Below are positions 5,711 through 33,644 of a stretch of 64,000 nucleotides of DNA, piece after piece. Within the stretch, counting starts at the first letter, position 1. The number at the start of each line of letters is the position of its first letter. The translations under genes were made by a program, and so were the position numbers. The stretch spans positions 186,001-250,000 of IMG/VR virus record IMGVR_UViG_3300044625_001067, one strand, 5' to 3'. The notes under the pieces are model-generated. The model ran no database searches. It was not told the DNA's origin and saw only the letters and a program-made list of their open reading frames with translations.

Positions 5711-5798
5711 CTACAGTGACCCCAAAGTTTTAGGACTCGCGGGTCGGATTGCTTCGGCAATCTTTGAAGTCAACTTTACACACAAGGAAACATCTATT

Positions 5799-8700
5799 AT
5801 GATGAATCATAAAGGTTCCACTCAGAGGTGACTCTGATTGAAAATCGGGTGAATTGCTGGGACACCTTAGTTTTGCTTTTGCAAAACAGGCAATCAGCAG
5901 CCAAGGCCCCTAGGGATAGGGGCAAGGTTCAACGACTAGGATAAGTAATCTAGAACAGAAGAAAGTCCCAAGAGCGCCCGACTCTTTGCTCAGGCAAAGA
6001 TGATGATATAGTCTGAACTTTACAGAAATGTAGAGAAGTAAAGGATAAAGAGCCTTTACGATAACAAGTTGCTACAACAGACCTATGCAGGGGTCGATCC
6101 CATTTTTTAGAGTGGCTTTGTTTTAACAAAGAAAATCCGGTGAATTGCTGGGACACCTTAGTTTTGCTTTTGCAAAATAGGCAATCAGCAGCCAAGTTTA
6201 CTTAGGGTCTTTACTAGCTATAGTAGAGTTAGGTAAAAAGGTTCAACGACTAGAAGATGACTGACCCAAGAATAACTCTTCCACGAGCGCCGGGACTCAC
6301 TAGTTACAGACAACTAAACAGATACTTTTTCTTCTTAGAAAAATTCGGTTCCCTCGAAAAGTTTAAATGCTGTCACGAACACCACATCCACCCAACTAAA
6401 ATGGGAGGAAGTGATGCCAAAGTGAACTTAATTTACCTTACACCCAGGGCCCATTACATCGCCCATCAGCTCCTCTTTAGAGCATTTACGGGAAACCAAC
6501 AAGCCCAACGGGCTGCTTGGCTTATGTCCCACACGATTGACGAAGCTTTCGTCAATTCTAGGGTGTATGAGTTTCTAAAAAATAACTACATTTTTTCTGA
6601 AGAGACCCGTAATAAACTTTCTGAAGCAGGTAGGAATAGGAAACTTAGTTTCGAGTCCAGAGAAAAAATCTCTAACTCAAACAAAGAAACCTACAGAAAC
6701 ACCTCTAAAGAAGTTCTACTAGAGAGAATTGAAAGGATGAGGGAGACTAAGAGAGGTACCCCGTGGAATGAGAGTCATAGAAACTCTATCCCCCCTTCTC
6801 TTCCTAGGGGGAGAGATCACTGGAGACTAAAAGATAGTCCATTATGGGGTGTATCCGATGAAATACTCAAAGTATGGCTAGAGAATGGTAAACCATCTTA
6901 TGTTATGCTTTGTAGATTGTTAGGAATCCCCAAAACTAAATCTGTTATGTCTGTAATAAAGAGTATGATATAGTCTGAACTCTTTGGAAACAAGGAGAAG
7001 TAGAGGATAAAGAGCCTTTACGATAACAAATGTCTTACAACCCTTGCACAAGGTTTTATGCTTCCGTCAACAAATATTGCGAATTTTATCGCACCGGTTG
7101 TTGACACTCCTACCAGAGCTGGGAGAATTCTCAGATTTGGGAAGGAACAGTTTGCTATAAACGATTTCCGTCGTGCTTACGGAACTAACATCCCATACGT
7201 CCAAAGCCGCTACGACTCTGAGCCTTATGCTCTAGAGCAGGAAGTGGTCGCCTGGGAATTGCCTGAAGAGGTTGAATCAATAGCCTCCATCAGTTGAGAA
7301 ACTGAAAGAAAAACTGGGTGAATTGCTGGGAAGCCTACGGCTTCAAACGAGAGTTTGAAACTATGGTAATCAGCAGCGAAGCGTTTTCGGGAGAAAACGA
7401 ACGTTCAACGACTAACAGCATACCACTAGAACAGTGATGAAGCTGACAAGAGCGCCTAGCACCCTAACAAGGGTGAAGATATAGTCTGAACTTTCTGGAA
7501 ACAGAAAGAAGTAAAGGATAAAGAGCCTTTACGATAACAGTATTGAATTGAAAACGCTGGCGAGGGTTGTTTGGCTCTTGCTGTGGCAGCTTAACCACAA
7601 ATTAACTGGGTGAATTGCTGGGATCCCTGAATTTCCATTAAAGAAACAGGCAATCAGCAGCCAAGTTTACTACGTCGAGAAGTCACTATGATTTCTGTGG
7701 TGAAAAGGTTCAACGACTAGACGATGAGTTTCGACAACAATAACTCGTCCACGAGCGCCCAGAGCAACATAACGTGCCATTACCGTAACAAATACGAAAA
7801 GTGGTACTGGACTTTAATCAACAAGTTTGAAAATAGAGACTACCTTCCAAAAAAGTTCGAAAATCACCACCCGGTACCAAAAGAGATCTGGCCCAAAGAC
7901 TGGGATAGTCGTGAGATTATAACCACTGTTGGAGTTAGTGTGAGGGAGCACTTCATACTACACCTACTACTAACCAAAGTGGGATTCAGCCACTCTTCCC
8001 TTATCAGATTTCTAAAAGGTTTTCGAAGGGGCCAACAAAGGGGCTTACACGCTACCAACTTAAAAAAGTTGTGGGATCGCTACCAGTTTAAGGGAGACAA
8101 TCTTCCGGATAAACCTTGGGAGCACAGCTACAGGGAAGATTTAAGTTTTCTCGACCTTTGGGTAGACGCTGACTACTTTTATTGGGTGTGGTTGAACATA
8201 CTTCCTACCCCCCTGGGGAAAGGATCCGGCTACCCCGGAAACGGCTATCGAAATCTGTCGAAAGCGGTTGGAGTTAAACCCACAAAGTCGATCAGAAGGA
8301 TGGTAATCTATTTCAAGGCAGGATGGGATCCCTTAAAGGACCCAAGTTGGTTAGATTTCGTTGCTAAGATATAGTCTGAACTTTCTGGAAACAGAAAGAA
8401 GTAAAGGATAAAGAGCCTTTACGATAACAATTTGCCTGCACAAGTAGATCTTCGTGCGATTGAAACAAGGAATGCGATGTCGAGGCTAAACACATTGGCC
8501 CTATGAGCTTAAGCTCATTTAGAAAATTGGGTGAATTGCTGGGAAACCTGACGGTTTCAGGAATGACTTCTCTGAAACACAAGGCAATCAGCAGCCAAGT
8601 TTACTACGTCGAGAAATCGCTATGATTTCTGTGGTGAAAAGGTTCAACGACTAGACGATGAGTTTCGACAACAATAACTCGTCCACGAGCGCCCAACTCT

Positions 8701-9486
8701 TTGCTTAGGCAAAGATGATGATATAGTCTGAGCTTCATGGAAACATGAAGATGTGGGGGATAAAAAGCCTTCACGATAACACAATGAATGAACAGCTACG
8801 AGTACACCGTTGCTCAAGCTGTTTCCGTCACCGCGACTTACAACCCTTACGAGCCCTATAACGGAACCGCAGGTTCCCAGACCGGACTCGGTTTCACAAC
8901 CTGGACAAACTTCAAGACAGCTTACGGCTCCGTTGCTGGAGACGCCGCCTGGTCTGGTGCTACTTCTAACCCAATTGAAGACATCCTAACCCTCAAGCGT
9001 GCAGTCGCCAACCAAATCGGTATCCGTCCAAACTCCGCAGTCGTCGGTACTGCCGTGTTTGACCTCTTGCTGACCAACGAGAAGATCCTTGATCGTATCA
9101 AGTACACATCTGCAGACAGCGTCGACACTGACGTCATTGCTCGCTACTTCGGTCTTGAGCGTGGCCTACGTGTTGCCGAAGGTCGTTACTTAGCGCAAGA
9201 TGGAACCCTACAGCCGGTATTCCCAGCTAACGGTATCCTTCTGTTCTACAGCCCTAACGGTCCTTCTGATTCCATCATGCCTGCTGGTGGTGCGAATGCT
9301 GCGACTCCTGCCTTCTCTTACACATATCAGCTCACAGGCACCCCCGCCGTCCGTCCCGAATACTACATTCGTGAACGTCGCGTTGTGCGTGCTGAAATCA
9401 CAATTGAACGTGTGGTTAACCTGGTTGGCCTCGGCGCAACTGGTCTTATCGGTTCTGGCGCTATGATCACCAACATCCTATCCTGA
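5799..9486 (+). CDS. Major capsid protein, spliced: join(5799-5807,6072-6103,7033-7272,7546-7567,8435-8487,8787-9486), 351 aa
   Basis: Removing five group I introns gives one 1056-nt frame: MMNLQQTYAGVDPILTTLAQGFMLPSTNIANFIAPVVDTPTRAGRILRFGKEQF...LPEEVIENAGEGPAQVDLRAIETRNAMSRLMNSYEY...; VDP.LT.LA.G / FGKE.F pattern of Mu-like capsids; RBS AAGGA upstream. Confidence 0.9.
5808..6071 (+). ncRNA. Group I intron 1 of capsid gene (264 nt, ORF-less)
   Basis: P1 GAAU|...GUUC with U-G; P3 CGGGUG/CGCCCG; GCAATCAGCAG; TTCAACGACTA; GATATAGTC; terminal G 6071. Confidence 0.9.
6104..7032 (+). ncRNA. Group I intron 2 of capsid gene (929 nt, carries HNH ORF)
   Basis: P1 CCAU|...GUGG; P3 CCGGUG/CGCCGG; same core motifs; terminal G 7032. 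Confidence 0.9.
6257..6973 (+). CDS. Intron-encoded HNH homing endonuclease with NUMOD3-like repeats
   Basis: HEHHIHP..MGGSD..NLIYLTPRAHYIAHQLL HNH signature; SEETRNKLSEA / SREKISNS repeats; lies within intron 2. Confidence 0.85.
   Translation: MTDPRITLPRAPGLTSYRQLNRYFFFLEKFGSLEKFKCCHEHHIHPTKMGGSDAKVNLIYLTPRAHYIAHQLLFRAFTGNQQAQRAAWLMSHTIDEAFVNSRVYEFLKNNYIFSEETRNKLSEAGRNRKLSFESREKISNSNKETYRNTSKEVLLERIERMRETKRGTPWNESHRNSIPPSLPRGRDHWRLKDSPLWGVSDEILKVWLENGKPSYVMLCRLLGIPKTKSVMSVIKSMI
7273..7545 (+). ncRNA. Group I intron 3 of capsid gene (273 nt, ORF-less)
   Basis: P1 GAGGU|...GCCUC; P10 UCAAU/AUUGA; P3 CUGGGUG/CGCCUAG; core motifs; terminal G 7545. Confidence 0.9.
7568..8434 (+). ncRNA. Group I intron 4 of capsid gene (867 nt, carries HNH-like ORF)
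   Basis: P1 GAGGGU|...GCUCUU; P3 CUGGGUG/CGCCCAG; core motifs; terminal G 8434. Confidence 0.9.
7724..8374 (+). CDS. Intron-encoded HNH-like homing endonuclease
   Basis: KYEKWYWTLI...ENHHPVPK...VSVREHFILHLLL; C-terminal region resembles that of 6257-6973; within intron 4. Confidence 0.75.
   Translation: MSFDNNNSSTSAQSNITCHYRNKYEKWYWTLINKFENRDYLPKKFENHHPVPKEIWPKDWDSREIITTVGVSVREHFILHLLLTKVGFSHSSLIRFLKGFRRGQQRGLHATNLKKLWDRYQFKGDNLPDKPWEHSYREDLSFLDLWVDADYFYWVWLNILPTPLGKGSGYPGNGYRNLSKAVGVKPTKSIRRMVIYFKAGWDPLKDPSWLDFVAKI
8488..8786 (+). ncRNA. Group I intron 5 of capsid gene (299 nt, ORF-less)
   Basis: P1 GGCU|...GGCC; P10 CAUU/AAUG; P3 UUGGGUG/CGCCCAA; core motifs; terminal G 8786. Confidence 0.9.
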
Positions 9487-18997: not shown

Positions 18998-19075
18998 CTA
19001 CCTAGACCTGGTCCGCAGAGGGTAAAATAAAAAGATGGGGTGAAAACACTCCCTGAAATTTTCACAACATCAGAC

Positions 19076-19333
19076 ATGAATAAACTCGACCACTGTTACC
19101 TCGAAGCCCTTTCTGAAGCACTGAAAGGTAACCTTGGAGAGGCTTTAGAACTCCGCAATGAAGCGGATGCGTTAGCATCCGAAGGCTTCTCCTTCTCCGA
19201 AAATTACGGGAATAAATACCCGTTCATTGAAGAGGCTGTAAATACCCTGATTAATTCGTACGAATTCACACGCTGCGTAAAACCGTCCGGTGAAGCGTAC
19301 GGAACAGCGGGGCAGTGTAGAAAAGGAACTGAA
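19076..19333 (+). repeat. Dispersed repeat copy 1 (copy 2 at 32658-32915)
   Basis: Near-identical DNA over ~200 nt (atgaataaactcgaccactg...tacgaattcac), protein similarity continuing to KGTE. Confidence 0.9.
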
Positions 19334-19687
19334 GAAGCTAAACTGGTAAAGGCGACTTCTCCCACCAGGCGAACCAAGGTAGAAAGAGACATGGCTGCCC
19401 AATCCACTCTCAAAAGACTCGCAGCCAAAGGTCCGGATACTTCCGTAAGAAAGCAGGGTAACAGGGTAGTGGTCAGTAAGGGGTCTGAGTTCAAGGCTGT
19501 TCTACACCCCGAGCACCAGACTGCCCTTGGAAAGTTAAAGGAGGGGGAAAGGTTCAAATTTGAGGACGAAAGTGGCACCCATTGGTCGGCGACACGGTCC
19601 GGAAATAGTATACGCTTAGAGGGGGGAGATACAAGGCATGGCAGCAAACCTTACAAAATGTCAATGGGTAGGGACAAACTGATGTGA
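19076..19687 (+). CDS. Hypothetical protein with duplicated N-terminal leader (candidate head-cargo protein)
   Basis: First ~86 aa nearly identical to 32658 ORF; basic C-terminus; motif GGGTAAAA at 19020. Confidence 0.65.
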   Translation: MNKLDHCYLEALSEALKGNLGEALELRNEADALASEGFSFSENYGNKYPFIEEAVNTLINSYEFTRCVKPSGEAYGTAGQCRKGTEEAKLVKATSPTRRTKVERDMAAQSTLKRLAAKGPDTSVRKQGNRVVVSKGSEFKAVLHPEHQTALGKLKEGERFKFEDESGTHWSATRSGNSIRLEGGDTRHGSKPYKMSMGRDKLM

Positions 19688-22073: not shown

Positions 22074-22226
22074 ATGGCAACTCCCGCACAGCTCTGGGCA
22101 CAGTACGACGTTGCTGTTAAGTCCAACAACTCGGCCTTGGCACAGGCCATCCTTAAACAATTGCAAAACTTCCGGAGTTACCCCACTTCAAATACGGGGT
22201 GCTCACGATGCAGAAAAACACTATGA
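22074..22226 (+). CDS. Small hypothetical protein (50 aa, CxxC)
   Basis: ATG 2 nt after upstream stop; ATGA overlap with next gene. Confidence 0.45.
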   Translation: MATPAQLWAQYDVAVKSNNSALAQAILKQLQNFRSYPTSNTGCSRCRKTL

Positions 22227-22498
22227 CAACAACTTCGAACGACAAAATCCTGAGGCAGAAAGAGACCCTTGCCGCAGCAGCATTGCAGGTTGCTGAAGAC
22301 GCTCTTGAGCTACTTCAAGACCACTTGGAGGAGTGCAGCACTCGAGATCTTGTGACTGTGTTCAACTCGGCTGTGAAAGCGCACCGCGAGATTGTGTCGG
22401 ATATTGTGAGTCTGACCGATTCAGAAAGCAAACAGGAGCAGATACTGGCGAAAGAATATAACGGGACACTTACGAAATTGCTGAAAAGTATTGAGTGA
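22223..22498 (+). CDS. Hypothetical helical protein, candidate terminase small subunit
   Basis: Directly upstream of large terminase; helical composition; position only. Confidence 0.4.
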   Translation: MTTTSNDKILRQKETLAAAALQVAEDALELLQDHLEECSTRDLVTVFNSAVKAHREIVSDIVSLTDSESKQEQILAKEYNGTLTKLLKSIE

Positions 22499-22527: not shown

Positions 22528-24291
22528 ATGAACTTTCGCACCCCGTCTATAACGCACGCTTCTCAGCTAGAGGAAAAATCCCGGTGGAGAAAATATACGA
22601 AAGGTATTCGAGAGCTTGAACTTCTTGAAGCACCTCGATCTGTAATTCAGGAGTTCAGGTTTAAGGCTGCCCGAGATTGTTTCCTGGCCTTTTGTGACAT
22701 TATGAAAAATGGGGACTTAAACGTTTCCCCCTTTCACGAGATCATCGCAAGTGCCTTTGAGGATCTTTACGAACGTCGATACAATCGTCTTATTATATCC
22801 TGCCCACCACGTTCAGGGAAGTCAATGCTTTCCACTATGTTTTTAGCGTGGTTGCTCGGAAAAGACGAAAGAACTCAGCACATCTTGGCTTCCTACGGGG
22901 CTTCTTTATCTCAAAAGTTTCACAGAGAAGCTGTCGTAATGATGAAGACCCCTTCATTTAGGAAGGTCTTTCCTGAATTTTCAGGGTTTAACCGTGACTC
23001 GAAATATGACTTAGTCGGGGGTGGTTATGTACTTGCGACGTCCGTTGGAGGTATTCTCACTGGTTTCACGTCTGGAACCATAGACATGGAATCCACGGGT
23101 ATTGGTGCGGCACTAATTGACGACCCCCTGAAATCGTCTGACTCTAAAGCAGCGCTGGACAACTTAGAAAGTTGGTGGGCAGAGCAAATGTCCACACGAA
23201 GGACAAATCACTACGCCCAAGTCATTATAGCAACCCGTTTTCATGAAAAAGACCTTCATGGGGTCTTAATGGACGGTGATGGTTTATATGACCCTGAAGA
23301 TAATCCTTTCGGATGGAGGTGGATAAACATAGCAGGGCTCTGTGAGGACCCTGACAATGATCCTCTAGGTAGAGAGATGGGAGAGAGCCACTGGCCCGAC
23401 AACCCAGCCTTCTCTGTTCCGATGCTTGAGTCCCAGAAAAAGATAATGGGTAGCTTTAAGTTCGCAGCTCTTTACCAAGGGGTTCCTGTATCGGCTGAGG
23501 GACAGATTGTAAAGAATAGCTGGGTGGAGGTGATTGGGGAAGAAGACTGCCCCCCCTTGGACGTTGTATGGTTTGGAGTTGACTGCGCTTTCTCCGAGCG
23601 AGAGAAAGCTGATGAGAGCGCAATATGCGTCGCTGGTATAAACACTCGTAACCCAGATACTGTTTACATTCGTGAGATTGTTAAGGGTAAGTGGGGCTTT
23701 CCTGACTTGATTGACTCGGTAAAGCAGCATTACGCTCTGTATAACGCAAAAGTTCTGTGCATTGAAAAAGCAGCATCGGGGCACTCTCTCATTCAAATGC
23801 TGAAGCGAGAGGCTAAGATACCTATCGAGGAAATGAGGCCGCTGAAGTCAAAGACGACTCGCCTTCAGGCAGTCTGCCCTTTACTCGAAAACCACCGAGT
23901 TATACTGGTGCGGGGCCTGTGGACTGACGCGTTCGTAAAGGAACTAACTTCTTTCCCGTATGTTCGCCACGACGATAGTACTGACGCCATGGTGTGGGCG
24001 CTGACTTACTACTCGCTCAAAATTGACTCCGTTGACCGGGGTATACAAGACTCGATAATTCAGAGTCGAAAATGGGCTGGTGACCTACGCAGACCAATGT
24101 TTCGGGATGGTCACTCTTACGGTGGGCTTTTCGAAGAGCGAAATGTGTCGGTCGGGGGCCGAAGAGCTCCCCGCAGTATGGGCTTCAACGACCCTGATCC
24201 TAAGTCTGCCGAGGTACCTGATAGGGGCATTTTCCGAGGTGGCCGCAGCCGAGGTCTTCGAAGTGTATCCGGCTACGACCTTTTTAATTAA
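22528..24291 (+). CDS. terL: Terminase large subunit
   Basis: Walker A ISCPPRSGKS, Walker B LIDDP, IATRFHEKDL, ALYQG, nuclease GVD..IEK..HDDSTDA. Confidence 0.93.
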   Translation: MNFRTPSITHASQLEEKSRWRKYTKGIRELELLEAPRSVIQEFRFKAARDCFLAFCDIMKNGDLNVSPFHEIIASAFEDLYERRYNRLIISCPPRSGKSMLSTMFLAWLLGKDERTQHILASYGASLSQKFHREAVVMMKTPSFRKVFPEFSGFNRDSKYDLVGGGYVLATSVGGILTGFTSGTIDMESTGIGAALIDDPLKSSDSKAALDNLESWWAEQMSTRRTNHYAQVIIATRFHEKDLHGVLMDGDGLYDPEDNPFGWRWINIAGLCEDPDNDPLGREMGESHWPDNPAFSVPMLESQKKIMGSFKFAALYQGVPVSAEGQIVKNSWVEVIGEEDCPPLDVVWFGVDCAFSEREKADESAICVAGINTRNPDTVYIREIVKGKWGFPDLIDSVKQHYALYNAKVLCIEKAASGHSLIQMLKREAKIPIEEMRPLKSKTTRLQAVCPLLENHRVILVRGLWTDAFVKELTSFPYVRHDDSTDAMVWALTYYSLKIDSVDRGIQDSIIQSRKWAGDLRRPMFRDGHSYGGLFEERNVSVGGRRAPRSMGFNDPDPKSAEVPDRGIFRGGRSRGLRSVSGYDLFN

Positions 24292-24324
24292 CTCGATCCA
24301 AGACAACACAAACACAATCACAGG

Positions 24325-25744
24325 ATGTCACTTAAACACCAAAAAATAACGCACGCTTCTCAACTAGCAGAGCACTCAAGCTGGAGGAGCTACCGACGAA
24401 AACTCCTTGAACTGAAACTTGAGGGGTTTCCTCAAGAGGCTTACGCTAAGGAAAGTGCAAAAAATAGCTTTCTTGCTTTCTGCGATCTTGTCTCCGATGC
24501 AGGAGGTTTCGCACTCGAAAACGCACCGCTCGATGCAAAAGCATACGAAGTGATAGGGTCCGCCTTTGAGGACATTTCCGAAGGAAGGTACCCAATTCTC
24601 CTCGCGTCGATGCCTCCCCGCACAGGGAAAACCACTCTAGGGGTTCACTTGCTGTCCTGGCTCCTTAGCAAAGACCCCATTGCTAACCACTTTGTAACCT
24701 CGTACACACAGAATCTGGCCGCGTCGGTAGTTCACAAGACTAAGCATTTGGTTCAGTCCCCTCCGTTCCGGACGTACTCCTCTGTGGTTCCCCCACTTGC
24801 ATCGTTTCATGTTTTACCAGTCTCCTTTGGGGGGTCTGTGTGCGGGGACTATTACGGTAGCTTATACGAAACGCCAGGCGTATGGCTAATCGACGACTGC
24901 CACGACGGTGTTTCGGACGGAAGTGTCAACGAGAAACAGATACGCGAGATAGGAGACCATTACGTAGGCAAAAATGCAATAGTCGTTCTCGGGTCTCGAA
25001 GAGGTGAGGGAGATATTTTCAGCTACTTTCTGGAAAAGTACGGTGTCTTTGACCCAGTCTCAAACCCGAACGGAGCCGTTCACATTAACTTATCCGCCAT
25101 CATTGAGAGCGAAGAAGAAGCCAAGGTTGATATTCTCGGTAGGAAAGTTGGGCAGGGTATCAATGACGCTAACTCCACATTTAGCCCGAAGAATCTTCAG
25201 GACTTGCGGAAAACAATAGGGGATGTAAAGTTCTCGTGGTTGTACAAAGGGGTGCTCTCCACTGGGTTCGGAGTCTGCTCCGAGGTACCCCCCTCTAGAT
25301 AAGGTCATTATCTCTATTGACCCCTCTTGCTCGCCAGGCAACGCGGATATGACTGGAATTTGTGTGGCTGGATCCACGAAGGAAAAGGACTGTGTGTACG
25401 TTCTCGACGCGTACCAGGCGAATTGGGACTTGGAGACTGTTGGCGTAATTGTTTTTCTAGCCGCTAAAGCCTACAGTGTTACAGAAGTTGTTATCGAGTC
25501 GTCCATGGCGAGTGAGCACTGGAGACAGTACCTAGAGAAGCTAGGTTTACCTGTTCGAGTGAGCAAGGAGAGAGTGGTGGCTAAGGCACTTGCGACCAAT
25601 CTAATGGTAAAGTCGGGGAAAGTAGCATCCAACCCAGATATACACAACGTGTTGTTTAAAAGTTGGGACTGCATTGGATCGTACTCAGATATAATGGATG
25701 CTATTTTGGTTAGCTTCATGGAACTGCTTCCACCTGCTGTTTAA
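24325..25744 (+). pseudogene. Second, divergent terminase large subunit paralog with apparent frameshift at C6 run 25288-25293
   Basis: ITHASQL.E.S.WR.Y shared with terL; MPPRTGKTT, WLIDD; other frame continues PLDKVIISIDPS...ICVAG, VIES, DIMDA; may be intact if the homopolymer is miscalled. Confidence 0.7.
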
Positions 25745-25806
25745 TTCCGGTGTAGATTGCGATTCGCAACCGCACAAAAAGTTTCTATTGTTTCTCAACA
25801 GTTAAA

Positions 25807-26010
25807 ATGGCTATTTCACCAACTGATAAAAACACTGCAATAATGCAGGAGCTACACGGGACTCGTTGTCTCATCACAAGTCCTTCCTCGGACAAGTACC
25901 TTCGTCAAGCGAAGACGCGAAAAGAGTACCCGATTCCCGAAGACTCCTACTCTCGGTGATGTGGCGGGGCCGACGGTTTTGATCTATTCGTAGAAAGAGT
26001 TCACGAGTGA
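25807..26010 (+). CDS. Small hypothetical protein with in-frame TGA at 25957
   Basis: MAISPTDKNT...DSYSR*CGGADGFDLFVERVHE; frame continues past the stop. Confidence 0.4.
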
Positions 26011-26185
26011 GTTGAACGCCACACTTCAGTCAAAAAAAAAGGGGGGGGCCAGCGGGTAAAGTCACTCGTAGGGTTTCCCTTTCACAATAAACTCTACCAT
26101 TCGTTTCGAAAGGGGGAAGGATTATGTAGTCCTGGTTATCAACGAAGAATACACGCTATCCACTGTTGTCAAATCCCCTTATACC

Positions 26186-26908
26186 ATGTTGAAAAGTCGA
26201 GACAAGCGCAAGTCACGTCGCGCTGAAACAGCTCAAACGGTTGAACGTTCCTATGGCCGGGGTATGGATGTCATGCCCTTCTACTCAAAGTCTGACCGCC
26301 AAGAAGATCTTTGGACTTCTTTGAATAAAAATACAGTTACCATAGCTATTGGACCGTCCGGAGTTGGGAAAACTCTTGTGGCCCTGTGGTGGGGTTTGAC
26401 TGAGATTTCAAAGGGTAATATACAGAAAGTTTACTACATTCGAAGTGATGTAGGATGCTCTCATCAAAGAAGTAGGGGTGCCTTGCCTGGAACGCTTGAG
26501 GAAAAGATGAAACCTCTTGTTGGACCAGTATACGACAATTTGGTTGTAATGACTAAGAGTAGGGGGGCTGCTGACTACTTGGTTGATAAGAAAATTGTAG
26601 AGCCCACTCTTCTAGAGGACTTACGGGGAAGATCGCTAAATGAGTGTCTGATTCTTTTTGATGAGGCTCAGAACTCTATGCCCGAAAACGTCAAAACCGT
26701 CATTAGTAGGGTTGGAAAAGATTCAAAAGTTATCATTACAGGGGACACTAGACAAATTGACCTCGATGTGTTTAAACCTGAAAACGGACTCTTAGACTGC
26801 TACCATCGACTTTCCTCCATTAGGGGTGTAGGGAGAGTTAAGTTTGAAAGAGAGGATATTGTAAGAAATGGAATTATAGCTGAAATCTTGGAGGCTTACG
26901 AGGCTTAG
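26186..26908 (+). CDS. phoH: PhoH-like ATPase
   Basis: GPSGVGKT, GALPG..EKM.P, LRGRSL, DEAQN, ITGD..QID, DIVRNG. Confidence 0.92.
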   Translation: MLKSRDKRKSRRAETAQTVERSYGRGMDVMPFYSKSDRQEDLWTSLNKNTVTIAIGPSGVGKTLVALWWGLTEISKGNIQKVYYIRSDVGCSHQRSRGALPGTLEEKMKPLVGPVYDNLVVMTKSRGAADYLVDKKIVEPTLLEDLRGRSLNECLILFDEAQNSMPENVKTVISRVGKDSKVIITGDTRQIDLDVFKPENGLLDCYHRLSSIRGVGRVKFEREDIVRNGIIAEILEAYEA

Positions 26909-32657: not shown

Positions 32658-33644
32658 ATGAACAAACTCGACCATTGTTACCTCGAAGCCCTTTCAGAAG
32701 CACTGAAAGGTAACTTAGGCGAAGCTTTAGAACTCCGCAACGAAGCGGATGCGTTAGCATCCGAAGGTTTCTCCTTCTCTGAGGACTACGGGAGTAAATA
32801 CCCATTCATTGAAGAAGCTGTAAACACTTTACTTGATTCGTACGAATTCACTCGATGCGTCCGAGCCGACGGCTCGGCCTATGGTACACGCGGGAAGTGT
32901 AAGAAGGGCACAGAGGCTGGAGCGGCTGACCAGAGGGGTGTAGGTAAGAAGGGTTCCATTAAGGAAAGAAAGGTAGCACGACTTTACGAAGCCCTTAAAG
33001 AAAAGAAACTTACGAGTAACGCGACCTAGCGATTAATGAGACAGATGCTTGACACTCCAGAAGTTAAGAGCCAGTTTTCAAGTCTAGAAAAGAAAGGCGA
33101 CGTGGAAGGGGCGAGAGCCCTTTACTCCAAGATTGAAGCTGAGGCTGGAAAAAGGGCGAGTGCAGGGGAAGGGAGACTGGCCAAGGGCGACAGTAGGACA
33201 CCTGCCAGTGCGGACAGGGCTCGTGCGTCAGAGAAAGCAGAAAGCAGAAAGAGTCCGATGAAGTTAGGGAAAGAACAGCCACAGGCCGGGAAAGACATAT
33301 CACCACGAAGAAGAAAAACTACAGCAGAGTATAAGGCAGTAGCGGTACAACTATTTGATCTTTATAAAATTGCTCAGCGAAAAGAGCGAGAAGCGGAAAA
33401 GGCACTAAAAAGCGTTGAGAAAGAAACCAAAGGCGACAATAGTCGTGAAGCGAGGCTAAAACGCTCTACTGCAGAGAAAGCTTTAATGAAGGCGTACTCA
33501 AGTGGAGAAAGAGCTATGAAGGCTGAACTCAAAGCAAACTCATCCTATATGAAATCACTCAAGAAGGACGTACGAGCTAAGATGAGTCCCCAACAAAAGG
33601 CCGCTGAAAAGGAGATTGATAAAATAATACAGGAACGAGGTTGA
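32658..33644 (+). CDS. Leader-bearing basic protein, interrupted by a single in-frame TAG at 33027 (ORFs 32658-33029 and 33036-33644)
   Basis: N-terminus duplicates 19076 ORF; NAT*RLMRQ continues in the same frame. Confidence 0.55.

What the first reader, a model, noticed from the sequence alone, without database searches (positions are those of the whole stretch)
22528..25744. Tandem second terminase large subunit paralog
Seen: directly after intact terL lies a shorter, divergent copy sharing the distinctive N-terminus (ITHASQL.E.S.WR.Y), Walker A/B and candidate nuclease acidic residues (IDPS, IES, DIMD). It is broken only by one extra C in a C6 run. Phages normally carry one TerL. Inference: either a decaying duplicate or a retained variant, for example a decoy for terminase-sensing defences such as Avs proteins, or a packaging regulator. 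A slippery C-run could also give separate ATPase-only and full-length forms.
Basis: partly seen in the sequence, partly recalled or inferred. Interest (0 to 1): 0.6.

Follow-up and report, generated by a model that had tools for sequence, protein, structure and literature searches.

The report
Conserved second terminase copy, here frameshifted
Right after its DNA-packaging enzyme gene (terL), this large uncultured lake phage carries a diverged second terL-like gene; related phages keep that gene intact under selection, here one extra base breaks it, and its job is unknown.

Summary
terL (22528-24291, 587 aa) is followed after 33 nt by a TerL paralogue: 24325-25302 plus 25349-25744 in the +1 frame. 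It is 32% identical to TerL (E 3e-46).

The break is one extra base that creates a C6 run (25288-25293) in the linker between the two domains. About 20 related contigs carry one uninterrupted ORF of 451-482 aa at the same place, always between terL and phoH.

The family is under purifying selection (dN/dS 0.18-0.53, never reaching 1). That is 5-10 times more relaxed than for TerL (0.02-0.06). It recombines in blocks and is cleanly absent from some relatives.

A confident model (pLDDT 89) has the full two-domain TerL fold. ATPase motifs are kept in all 25 clusters aligned (two singletons vary in Walker A). The nuclease centre is thinned, and the core triad is hit in three lineages. The ~90-aa basic C-terminal tail of TerL is missing.

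An independent contig from the probable source run (70x) reproduces the frameshift, so it is probably real. Relatives have no slippery run, so programmed frameshifting is not supported.

Best reading: an undescribed, dispensable, TerL-derived accessory ATPase family, with a recently inactivated allele in this window. The decoy idea is untested.

The parts
22208..22498 (+). Small conserved 96-aa helical protein directly upstream of terL. Function unknown. Present in relatives with and without the paralogue.
   Evidence: 58-100% identity in relatives, 31% in S-CBWM1. No Pfam or PHROG hit.
22528..24291 (+). terL, the canonical terminase large subunit (587 aa), with a ~90-aa Gly/Arg-rich C-terminal tail.
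   Evidence: Pfam Terminase_6N and 6C. 60% identical to Synechococcus phage S-CBWM1 TerL. dN/dS 0.02-0.06.
24292..24324 (+). 33-nt spacer between terL and the paralogue. No promoter-like or terminator-like site, so co-transcription is likely.
   Evidence: The spacer is 33-59 nt in relatives. A metatranscriptome contig of a related strain spans 23560-24822.
24325..25302 (+). 5' ORF of the TerL paralogue: N-terminal helices plus the ATPase domain. It ends prematurely at TAA 25300-25302, giving 325 aa.
   Evidence: Walker A and B and the C-motif Arg are kept.
25288..25293 (+). C6 run and frameshift site. There is one base more than in all relatives. It lies in the linker between the ATPase and nuclease-like domains.
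   Evidence: The Logan contig of source run X1 (70x) is identical here. X3 carries the allele one base shorter at 25287.
25291..25744 (+). 3' part of the paralogue in the +1 frame, which is open from 25229: the RNase H-like (nuclease-like) domain. The first ATG is at 25349. A product starting there would lack strand beta-1 and the first catalytic Asp (IDPS).
26186..26908 (+). phoH-like ATPase gene, the conserved downstream neighbour. In relatives that lack the paralogue it follows terL directly.
   Evidence: Pfam PhoH 7.5e-50. Synteny.

Best explanation
SHOWN. The window lies in a 277-kb uncultured lake phage whose closest cultured relative is Synechococcus phage S-CBWM1. Directly after terL it carries a member of an undescribed, lineage-restricted family of TerL-derived proteins of about 450-480 aa.

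The family has the complete two-domain TerL fold. Every lineage keeps the ATPase catalytic set. The nuclease centre is thinned: auxiliary Lys and Asp residues are lost in nearly all members, and core triad residues are lost in three lineages. The basic C-terminal tail that all TerLs of this clade carry is missing.

The family is kept by purifying selection, much more loosely than TerL. It is shuffled in blocks between lineages and is patchily present.

In this window's phage the gene is interrupted by a genuine 1-nt insertion in the interdomain linker. The main products would be a 325-aa ATPase-only protein and, at best, a C-terminal fragment without its first catalytic Asp. This is a recent, strain-level inactivation or truncation. 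It also shows the gene can be dispensed with, at least for a while.

INFERRED MECHANISM. The intact protein is a non-essential accessory ATPase made together with TerL late in infection. It acts on DNA or on the terminase machinery away from the portal, as a modulator or competitor of packaging rather than as a second motor.
For: - Homology and fold: 32% identity to TerL, E 3e-46. PHROG 38 at E 4.9e-24. AF2 model with a 113-row alignment, pLDDT 89.4 and pTM 0.83. Foldseek top hits are all TerLs: PhiV-1 8dgc_E at 2.3e-18, then HK97, T4 gp17 and Sf6. A profile of the joint paralogue+TerL alignment (A4) hits the PhiV-1 and T7 TerL chains.
- Family and synteny: 34 clusters at 90% identity and 4 clusters at 50% identity ahead of the true TerLs. 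The gene always lies between terL and phoH.
- Intactness: a single uninterrupted frame in every relative.
- Selection: dN/dS 0.18-0.53, with 0 of 1000 bootstraps reaching 1, against 0.02-0.06 for terL.
- Local outlier: neighbouring genes are 96-100% identical where the paralogue is only 50-95% identical.
- Block mosaicism.
- Residues: ATPase motifs are kept in all lineages. D458S is near-universal, and D462 is replaced in all but the window's own subgroup. K421 is lost in most members. Triad residues are lost in P0032, P0036 and P0038.
- Tail absent.
- Patchiness: clean absence in L036-L042 and S-CBWM1. Five changes are needed on the TerL tree.
- Frameshift: unique to the window and reproduced at 70x by an independently built contig. 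A second sample covers the site without the 1-nt deletion. An in-frame C7 run in terL argues against systematic homopolymer error.
- Recency: the window's allele still shows dN/dS 0.18 against its nearest relative.
Against: - No experiment or interaction evidence bears on function.
- The off-portal role rests on the missing tail and on analogy with other TerLs, whose C-termini dock on the portal. That is established knowledge for lambda-like and T3/T7-like systems, not tested here.
- Only contigs, not raw reads, were available, so minority intact alleles in the source sample cannot be excluded.
- The window's subgroup has His at a position where all 88 TerLs compared have Arg. Its ATPase may therefore already be altered.
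- Fast change, allele shuffling and dispensability fit a conflict gene at least as well as a packaging modulator.
Confidence: 0.55

Rival explanations
1. Immune decoy or target mimic. The paralogue imitates TerL to bind and neutralise host sensors that detect TerL (Avs1-3-type STAND NTPases). It diversifies quickly while the real TerL stays constant, as with the poxvirus K3L mimic of eIF2alpha.
For: - TerL is about 98% conserved while the paralogue is 50-95% identical in the same genomes.
- It is patchy, dispensable and shuffled like a conflict gene.
- It keeps the TerL fold and the ATPase-site residues. From my own knowledge of Gao et al. 2022, not checked here, Avs3 reads those residues.
Against: - No window showed robust dN/dS above 1.
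- No host or Avs gene is known for this phage.
- A faithful mimic should itself trigger Avs.
- Nothing here tests binding.
Confidence: 0.12
2. Second subunit of the packaging motor or maturation nuclease: a hetero-oligomer with TerL, or a dedicated cutting enzyme needed for packaging.
For: - It shares an operon with terL.
- The N-terminal motif is shared and the ATPase is kept.
Against: - A lineage with the frameshift is abundant at 70x.
- Relatives lack the gene altogether.
- Paralogue alleles swap freely against near-identical TerLs.
- The nuclease triad is lost in three lineages.
- No C-terminal tail.
Confidence: 0.1
3. The frameshift is a sequencing or assembly error, and the window's gene is really intact.
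For: - The site is a homopolymer.
- Every relative is intact.
- dN/dS on the window's lineage is still low.
Against: - Logan's independent contig from the probable source run has the same C6 at 70x with no difference over 3.5 kb.
- A second sample covers the site without the deletion.
- terL's C7 run is in frame.
Confidence: 0.1
4. Programmed recoding: +1 ribosomal slippage on CCC_CCC, or transcriptional slippage, gives both an ATPase-only and a full-length protein.
For: - There is a 71-nt overlap window (25229-25299) in which a +1 shift restores the frame.
- CCC-C sites are known to be +1-prone (established knowledge on tRNA-Pro).
Against: - No relative has the run or the shift, so it is not a conserved feature.
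- C6 is short for transcriptional slippage.
Confidence: 0.06
5. A selfish, homing-like TerL-derived nuclease gene that spreads between co-infecting relatives and cycles through gain, decay and loss.
For: - Clean presence or absence at one intergenic site next to a highly conserved gene.
- Phylogeny incongruent with TerL.
- Allele swaps in the flanking phoH.
- The genome is rich in mobile introns.
Against: - The ATPase, not the nuclease, is the conserved part.
- No known homing-endonuclease domain.
- TerL nucleases are not sequence-specific (established knowledge).
Confidence: 0.05
6. A neutral, decaying duplicate across the whole clade.
For: - The window's allele is broken.
- The gene is absent from some relatives.
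Against: - About 20 intact copies down to 37% identity.
- dN/dS CI is below 1 in all pairs.
- Family-wide invariant residues are kept.
Confidence: 0.02

Closest known systems
Terminase large subunit (TerL; Pfam Terminase_6N/6C, PHROG 38). Nearest cultured example: Synechococcus phage S-CBWM1 TerL. Nearest solved examples: PhiV-1/T7 gp19, HK97, T4 gp17.
   Same: Two-domain ASCE ATPase plus RNase H-like fold. Walker A PPRxGK[ST], Walker B DD, C-motif Arg, and the core D/E/D of the nuclease in most members. Clade-typical N-terminal helices.
   Different: It is a second copy beside a canonical TerL. It has no C-terminal tail. Several positions conserved in 82-98% of the 88 TerLs compared are changed (K442, D482, D486, FP476/477, W263, Q317, P269). 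It scores below the Pfam thresholds. Its dN is about 10 times higher. It is patchy and dispensable.
'Two large terminase homologs in tandem' reported for Xanthomonas jumbo phages XaC1 and XbC2 (PMC11273794), and split TerL genes such as phiPDS1 (PMC10773633).
   Same: Two terL-like ORFs side by side in a phage genome.
   Different: The phiPDS1 case is one gene split into its two domains. The XaC1/XbC2 case is only mentioned in the paper and I did not examine it. Here both copies are complete two-domain genes, and the second forms its own conserved family.
Target-mimic decoys such as poxvirus K3L (an eIF2alpha mimic). This is an analogy from my own knowledge.
   Same: A conserved target alongside a fast-diverging, dispensable look-alike encoded by the virus.
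   Different: No evidence here for binding to any immune sensor, and no demonstrated positive selection.

Membership tests
Terminase large subunit (TerL) | N-terminal ASCE ATPase domain plus C-terminal RNase H-like nuclease domain (fold). | tested here: met
   AF2 model with pLDDT 89.4. Foldseek probability 1.00 to full-length TerLs 8dgc_E, 6z6d, 3cpe and 4idh.
Terminase large subunit (TerL) | Walker A, Walker B and the coupling-motif residues of the ATPase. | tested here: met
   P97, P98, R99, G101, K102, D190, D191, R225 and D230 are kept in 23-25 of 25 paralogue clusters.
Terminase large subunit (TerL) | Complete nuclease active site: the D/E/D triad plus the conserved Lys and the HDDxxD motif. 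| tested here: inconclusive
   The triad D336/E395/D459 is kept in 22 of 25 clusters. TerL K442, D482 and D486, each 91-98% conserved in TerLs, are replaced. The triad is lost in P0032, P0036 and P0038.
Terminase large subunit (TerL) | Scores above the curated Pfam thresholds for Terminase_6N/6C or a related model. | tested here: not met
   No Pfam hit for the window's two ORFs. For the intact relative P0004 there is only a sub-threshold T7 RNaseH-like hit, 16 bits against a cut-off of 27. PHROG 38 does match at 4.9e-24.
Terminase large subunit (TerL) | The C-terminal extension found in all TerLs of this clade (presumed portal-docking tail). | tested here: not met
   The paralogues end right after the last nuclease helix (...LLPxV). 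TerLs of the clade carry 60-90 further residues.
Terminase large subunit (TerL) | Drives DNA packaging and cuts concatemers. | not testable with these tools
   Needs biochemistry or genetics.
Programmed frameshift gene | Slippery site and frame change conserved in relatives. | tested here: not met
   Relatives read CCCACC or CCCACA in a single frame.
Pseudogene (this window's allele) | A frame-disrupting lesion that is real and absent from functional relatives. | tested here: met
   A unique 1-nt insertion, reproduced by an independent 70x contig. Raw reads were not available.
Free-standing homing endonuclease gene | Patchy presence at a fixed intergenic site, with phylogeny incongruent with the flanks. 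| tested here: met
Free-standing homing endonuclease gene | A recognised homing-endonuclease catalytic domain with a conserved nuclease site. | tested here: not met
   No such domain. The nuclease residues are the less conserved part.
Avs (TerL-sensor) decoy | Binds the sensor and blocks its activation. | not testable with these tools
   No host or sensor is known. Only fold mimicry is shown.

The most novel reading that the evidence does not exclude
The family is a virus-encoded TerL mimic used in conflict. It could be a decoy for host sensors that recognise TerL, or a weapon against the terminase of co-infecting relatives. That would explain why it keeps the TerL fold and the ATPase-site residues. 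It would also explain why it diversifies and recombines much faster than TerL, and why it is gained, lost and occasionally broken, as in this window.
Probability: 0.15. Interest if true: 0.85.

Novelty: new variant of a known kind. Interest (0 to 1): 0.55.

Why it matters
TerL is the most conserved tailed-phage protein and is normally present as a single copy. In the tblastn search of 50,697 phage records, 2,542 records matched this TerL at 2,543 places in all, so second copies are very rare.

Here a complete second TerL has been kept by selection in a whole clade of uncultured large lake phages. Its ATPase is conserved, its nuclease centre is thinned and its tail is missing. That gives a natural dissection of which TerL features matter outside the packaging motor.

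If it proves to be a regulator, it adds a new component to packaging. If it proves to be a mimic used against TerL-sensing immunity or against rival phages, it would be a new class of counter-defence.

The broken allele in this window is a ready-made natural knock-out for comparison.

Tried and rejected
- blastn of the region against 50,697 phage records gave no match. tblastn with the paralogue found only ordinary TerLs in 8 records.
- The first AF2 run used only 24 paralogue rows and gave pLDDT 52. I discarded it in favour of the 113-row run.
- Complex prediction of the paralogue ATPase domain with the conserved 96-aa upstream protein scored 0.00, 'no answer'. This is no evidence either way.
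- I considered that the paralogue goes with the roughly 280-kb genome size and is lacking in 139-kb relatives. This is not supported: the paralogue-less contigs G001 and G002 are rated only 53-61% complete.
- I considered an Arg-to-Lys change at a putative arginine finger (paralogue position 140). I withdrew it because the close TerLs are not conserved there.
- I looked for other duplicated packaging or structural genes, such as a second portal or capsid, in the 277-kb genome. None was found.
- Origin is unresolved. In a quick tree the paralogues form one clade (support 100) on a long stem (1.53) that lies outside the TerL clade of this group. Long-branch effects are possible. The careful search did not finish and no AU test was run.
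- Sliding-window dN/dS gave no robust window above 1.
- For the codon analyses only, a script read the window's allele through by leaving out base 25287. No other genetic code was used.
- I did not search for a TerS.
Full report
**What is there.**
The window is bases 186001-250000 of a 277,244-base IMG/VR virus record rated 98% complete.
- terL is 22528-24291 (587 aa). It matches Pfam Terminase_6C at 2.2e-16 and Terminase_6N at 9e-5.
- After a 33-nt spacer comes a 325-aa ORF (24325-25302). A 131-aa ORF in the +1 frame follows at 25349-25744.
- The first ORF aligns with TerL residues 1-319 at 32% identity, E 3e-46. The second aligns with the TerL nuclease domain.
- The C6 run is at 25288-25293. 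The +1 frame is open from 25229, and the zero-frame stop is TAA at 25300-25302.

**Relatives.**
- The closest cultured phage by TerL is Synechococcus phage S-CBWM1 (60% identity). In that phage terL is followed by a 54-aa ORF and phoH, with no second copy.
- Ten IMG/VR contigs carry the paralogue at 74-95% identity in the N-terminal part. In every one the two halves lie in one frame and form one ORF of 468-476 aa, 33-59 nt after terL.
- The 5.8-billion-protein search found 34 clusters, mostly 450-480 aa, down to 40% identity. They lie on contigs of up to 282 kb. All are unnamed, and none has a terminase Pfam domain.
- An exhaustive profile search found four 50%-identity clusters ahead of the true TerLs.
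- In the more distant members examined (37-53% identity) the order terL, paralogue, phoH is the same.
- Relatives whose TerL is 66-79% identical have terL followed directly by phoH, with no remnant. A whole-record search of two of them found only TerL.
- On a TerL tree, presence and absence need five changes, at least three of them forced by well-supported branches. The pattern is no more clustered than shuffled labels.
- Paralogue and TerL trees disagree. For example, L031 and L041 have an 84% TerL but an 89% paralogue, while L006 has a 98% TerL but a 69% paralogue.

**Selection.**
- Pairwise Nei-Gojobori dN/dS for the paralogue is 0.18-0.53. No bootstrap replicate out of 1000 reached 1 in six pairs. 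For terL it is 0.02-0.06.
- Among the close relatives, neighbouring genes are 96-100% identical. The paralogue's N-terminal part is 74-95% and its C-terminal part 50-95% identical.
- Sliding windows show block mosaicism. L004 and L010 are identical in codons 1-90 and 226-375 but heavily diverged in codons 106-225. L006 has a foreign C-terminal half. Within diverged blocks pN/pS is 0.4-0.7, and no window is robustly above 1.
- The family is therefore a functional gene under relaxed constraint and frequent recombination. It is not a decaying remnant.

**Structure and residues.**
- A model built from a 113-row alignment of paralogues and TerLs reached pLDDT 89.4 and pTM 0.83.
- Its best PDB matches are full-length TerLs: PhiV-1 TerL from the Avs3 complex at 2.3e-18, then HK97, T4 gp17, Sf6 and D6E. 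At the sequence level, the joint paralogue+TerL alignment profile matches the PhiV-1 and T7 TerLs and the thermophilic-phage TerL nuclease-domain chains 5tge and 5m1f.
- I compared 88 diverse TerLs with 25 paralogue clusters.
  - The paralogues keep PPRxGK[ST], the DD of Walker B, R225, D230, R273 and Y311 in every lineage.
  - In the nuclease-like domain D336, D345, E395 and D459 are kept in most.
  - TerL K442 (98% conserved), D482 (91%), D486 (98%) and the FP motif (94%) are replaced.
  - Three lineages have lost triad residues: P0032 (E395K), P0036 (D345G, E395K, D459G) and P0038 (D336S, D459A).
  - The window's own subgroup has His or Leu where every TerL compared has Arg (position 212).
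- All TerLs of the clade carry a 60-90-aa Gly/Arg-rich C-terminal tail. No paralogue has it.
It is partly lost in the two most distant paralogues.

**The frameshift.**
- Against the relatives the window has one extra base in GAGGT[A]CCCCCCT. Relatives read GAGGTCCCACCT or GAGATCCCACAC.
- Only Logan contigs were available, not raw reads.
  - The contig from the probable source run (13.4 kb, word depth 70) is identical to the window over all 3,501 bases laid.
  - A second lake sample covers position 25287 at depth 5.3 without the 1-nt deletion.
  - A third sample carries a related allele one base shorter, which is the intact frame.
- terL contains an in-frame C7 run, so homopolymers are not systematically miscalled.
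- The lesion lies in the interdomain linker. The zero-frame product is the ATPase domain alone. The first ATG downstream would start after strand beta-1 and its catalytic Asp.
- The window's allele still shows dN/dS 0.18 against its nearest relative, so the lesion is recent.
- Because no relative has a slippery run, programmed frameshifting is not a conserved feature. Low-level +1 slippage at CCC_CCC remains possible.

**Expression.**
- There is no promoter-like or terminator-like site between terL and the paralogue.
- A metatranscriptome contig of a related strain runs from 23560 to 24822, across the junction. Another covers 25288-25528.
- DNA carry-over in that library cannot be excluded.

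**Interpretation.**
- Shown: this is a conserved, lineage-restricted, TerL-derived family with the ATPase kept, the nuclease thinned and the tail missing. It is under purifying but relaxed selection, it recombines, and it is patchy. This window's allele is broken by a probably genuine insertion.
- Inferred: it is an accessory, dispensable ATPase co-expressed with TerL that acts away from the portal.
- The free exchange of paralogue alleles against almost identical TerLs argues against a tightly co-evolving heteromer.
- A target-mimic or conflict role fits the evolutionary pattern but has no direct support.
- Full-text searches found no description of a complete, conserved TerL paralogue. One paper mentions tandem 'large terminase homologs' in two Xanthomonas jumbo phages, and another describes a TerL split into its two domains.

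**Limits.**
- There are no raw reads, no host and no biochemistry.
- The complex prediction gave no answer.
- The careful tree did not finish.
- For the codon analyses a script read the window's allele through by omitting base 25287.
- No alternative genetic code was used.

Noticed in passing
window 5794-8750 (+): Five Rfam group I introns (51-107 bits) are packed into 3 kb. The ORF after the last one (8788-9486) matches Phage_cap_E, the major capsid protein. An ORF at 6257-6973 has a NUMOD3 motif, which suggests a homing endonuclease. The capsid gene appears to be split by several introns.
   Followed up: partly
window 26186-26908 (phoH): phoH comes in two allele classes among otherwise 96-100% identical relatives. 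It is 99-100% identical in L005, L006, L012, L031 and L041 but only 59% in L004, L010 and L028. The stretch downstream of terL is a recombination hot spot.
   Followed up: partly
L045:1110-3362: In one 3.5-kb Logan contig the gene after terL is 750 aa. It has an extra ATPase-domain copy (residues 17-258, 48% identical to paralogue residues 65-326) fused in front of a complete paralogue. It rests on a single contig, so misassembly is not excluded.
   Followed up: partly
G000:C1:145739-149101 (outside the window; locus L046): Two tandem 495-aa paralogues, 49% identical, both with a Tet/JBP 2OG-Fe dioxygenase domain. This suggests modified cytosines in the phage DNA.
   Followed up: partly
window 19040-19687 and 32658-33029; also G000:C1 167659-168171 and several genes at 259-276 kb: A short module is shared at 40-90% identity by more than ten proteins of the genome, probably fibre or baseplate proteins.
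   Followed up: no
L017:3608-4222 and L018:3608-4222: These relatives have an extra 204-aa ORF inserted between the conserved 96-aa gene and terL. It has no Pfam match.
   Followed up: partly
window 25745-26185: About 440 nt between the paralogue and phoH hold no ORF of 60 aa or more. A similar gap is present in relatives, for example L015 7429-7923. There is no Rfam hit.
   Followed up: no
window 22208-22498: A small helical 96-aa protein with an invariant core (ECSTRDLV..FNSAVKAHR) lies directly upstream of terL in all relatives, including S-CBWM1. It has no family match. It could be a small terminase subunit or another packaging factor.
   Followed up: partly
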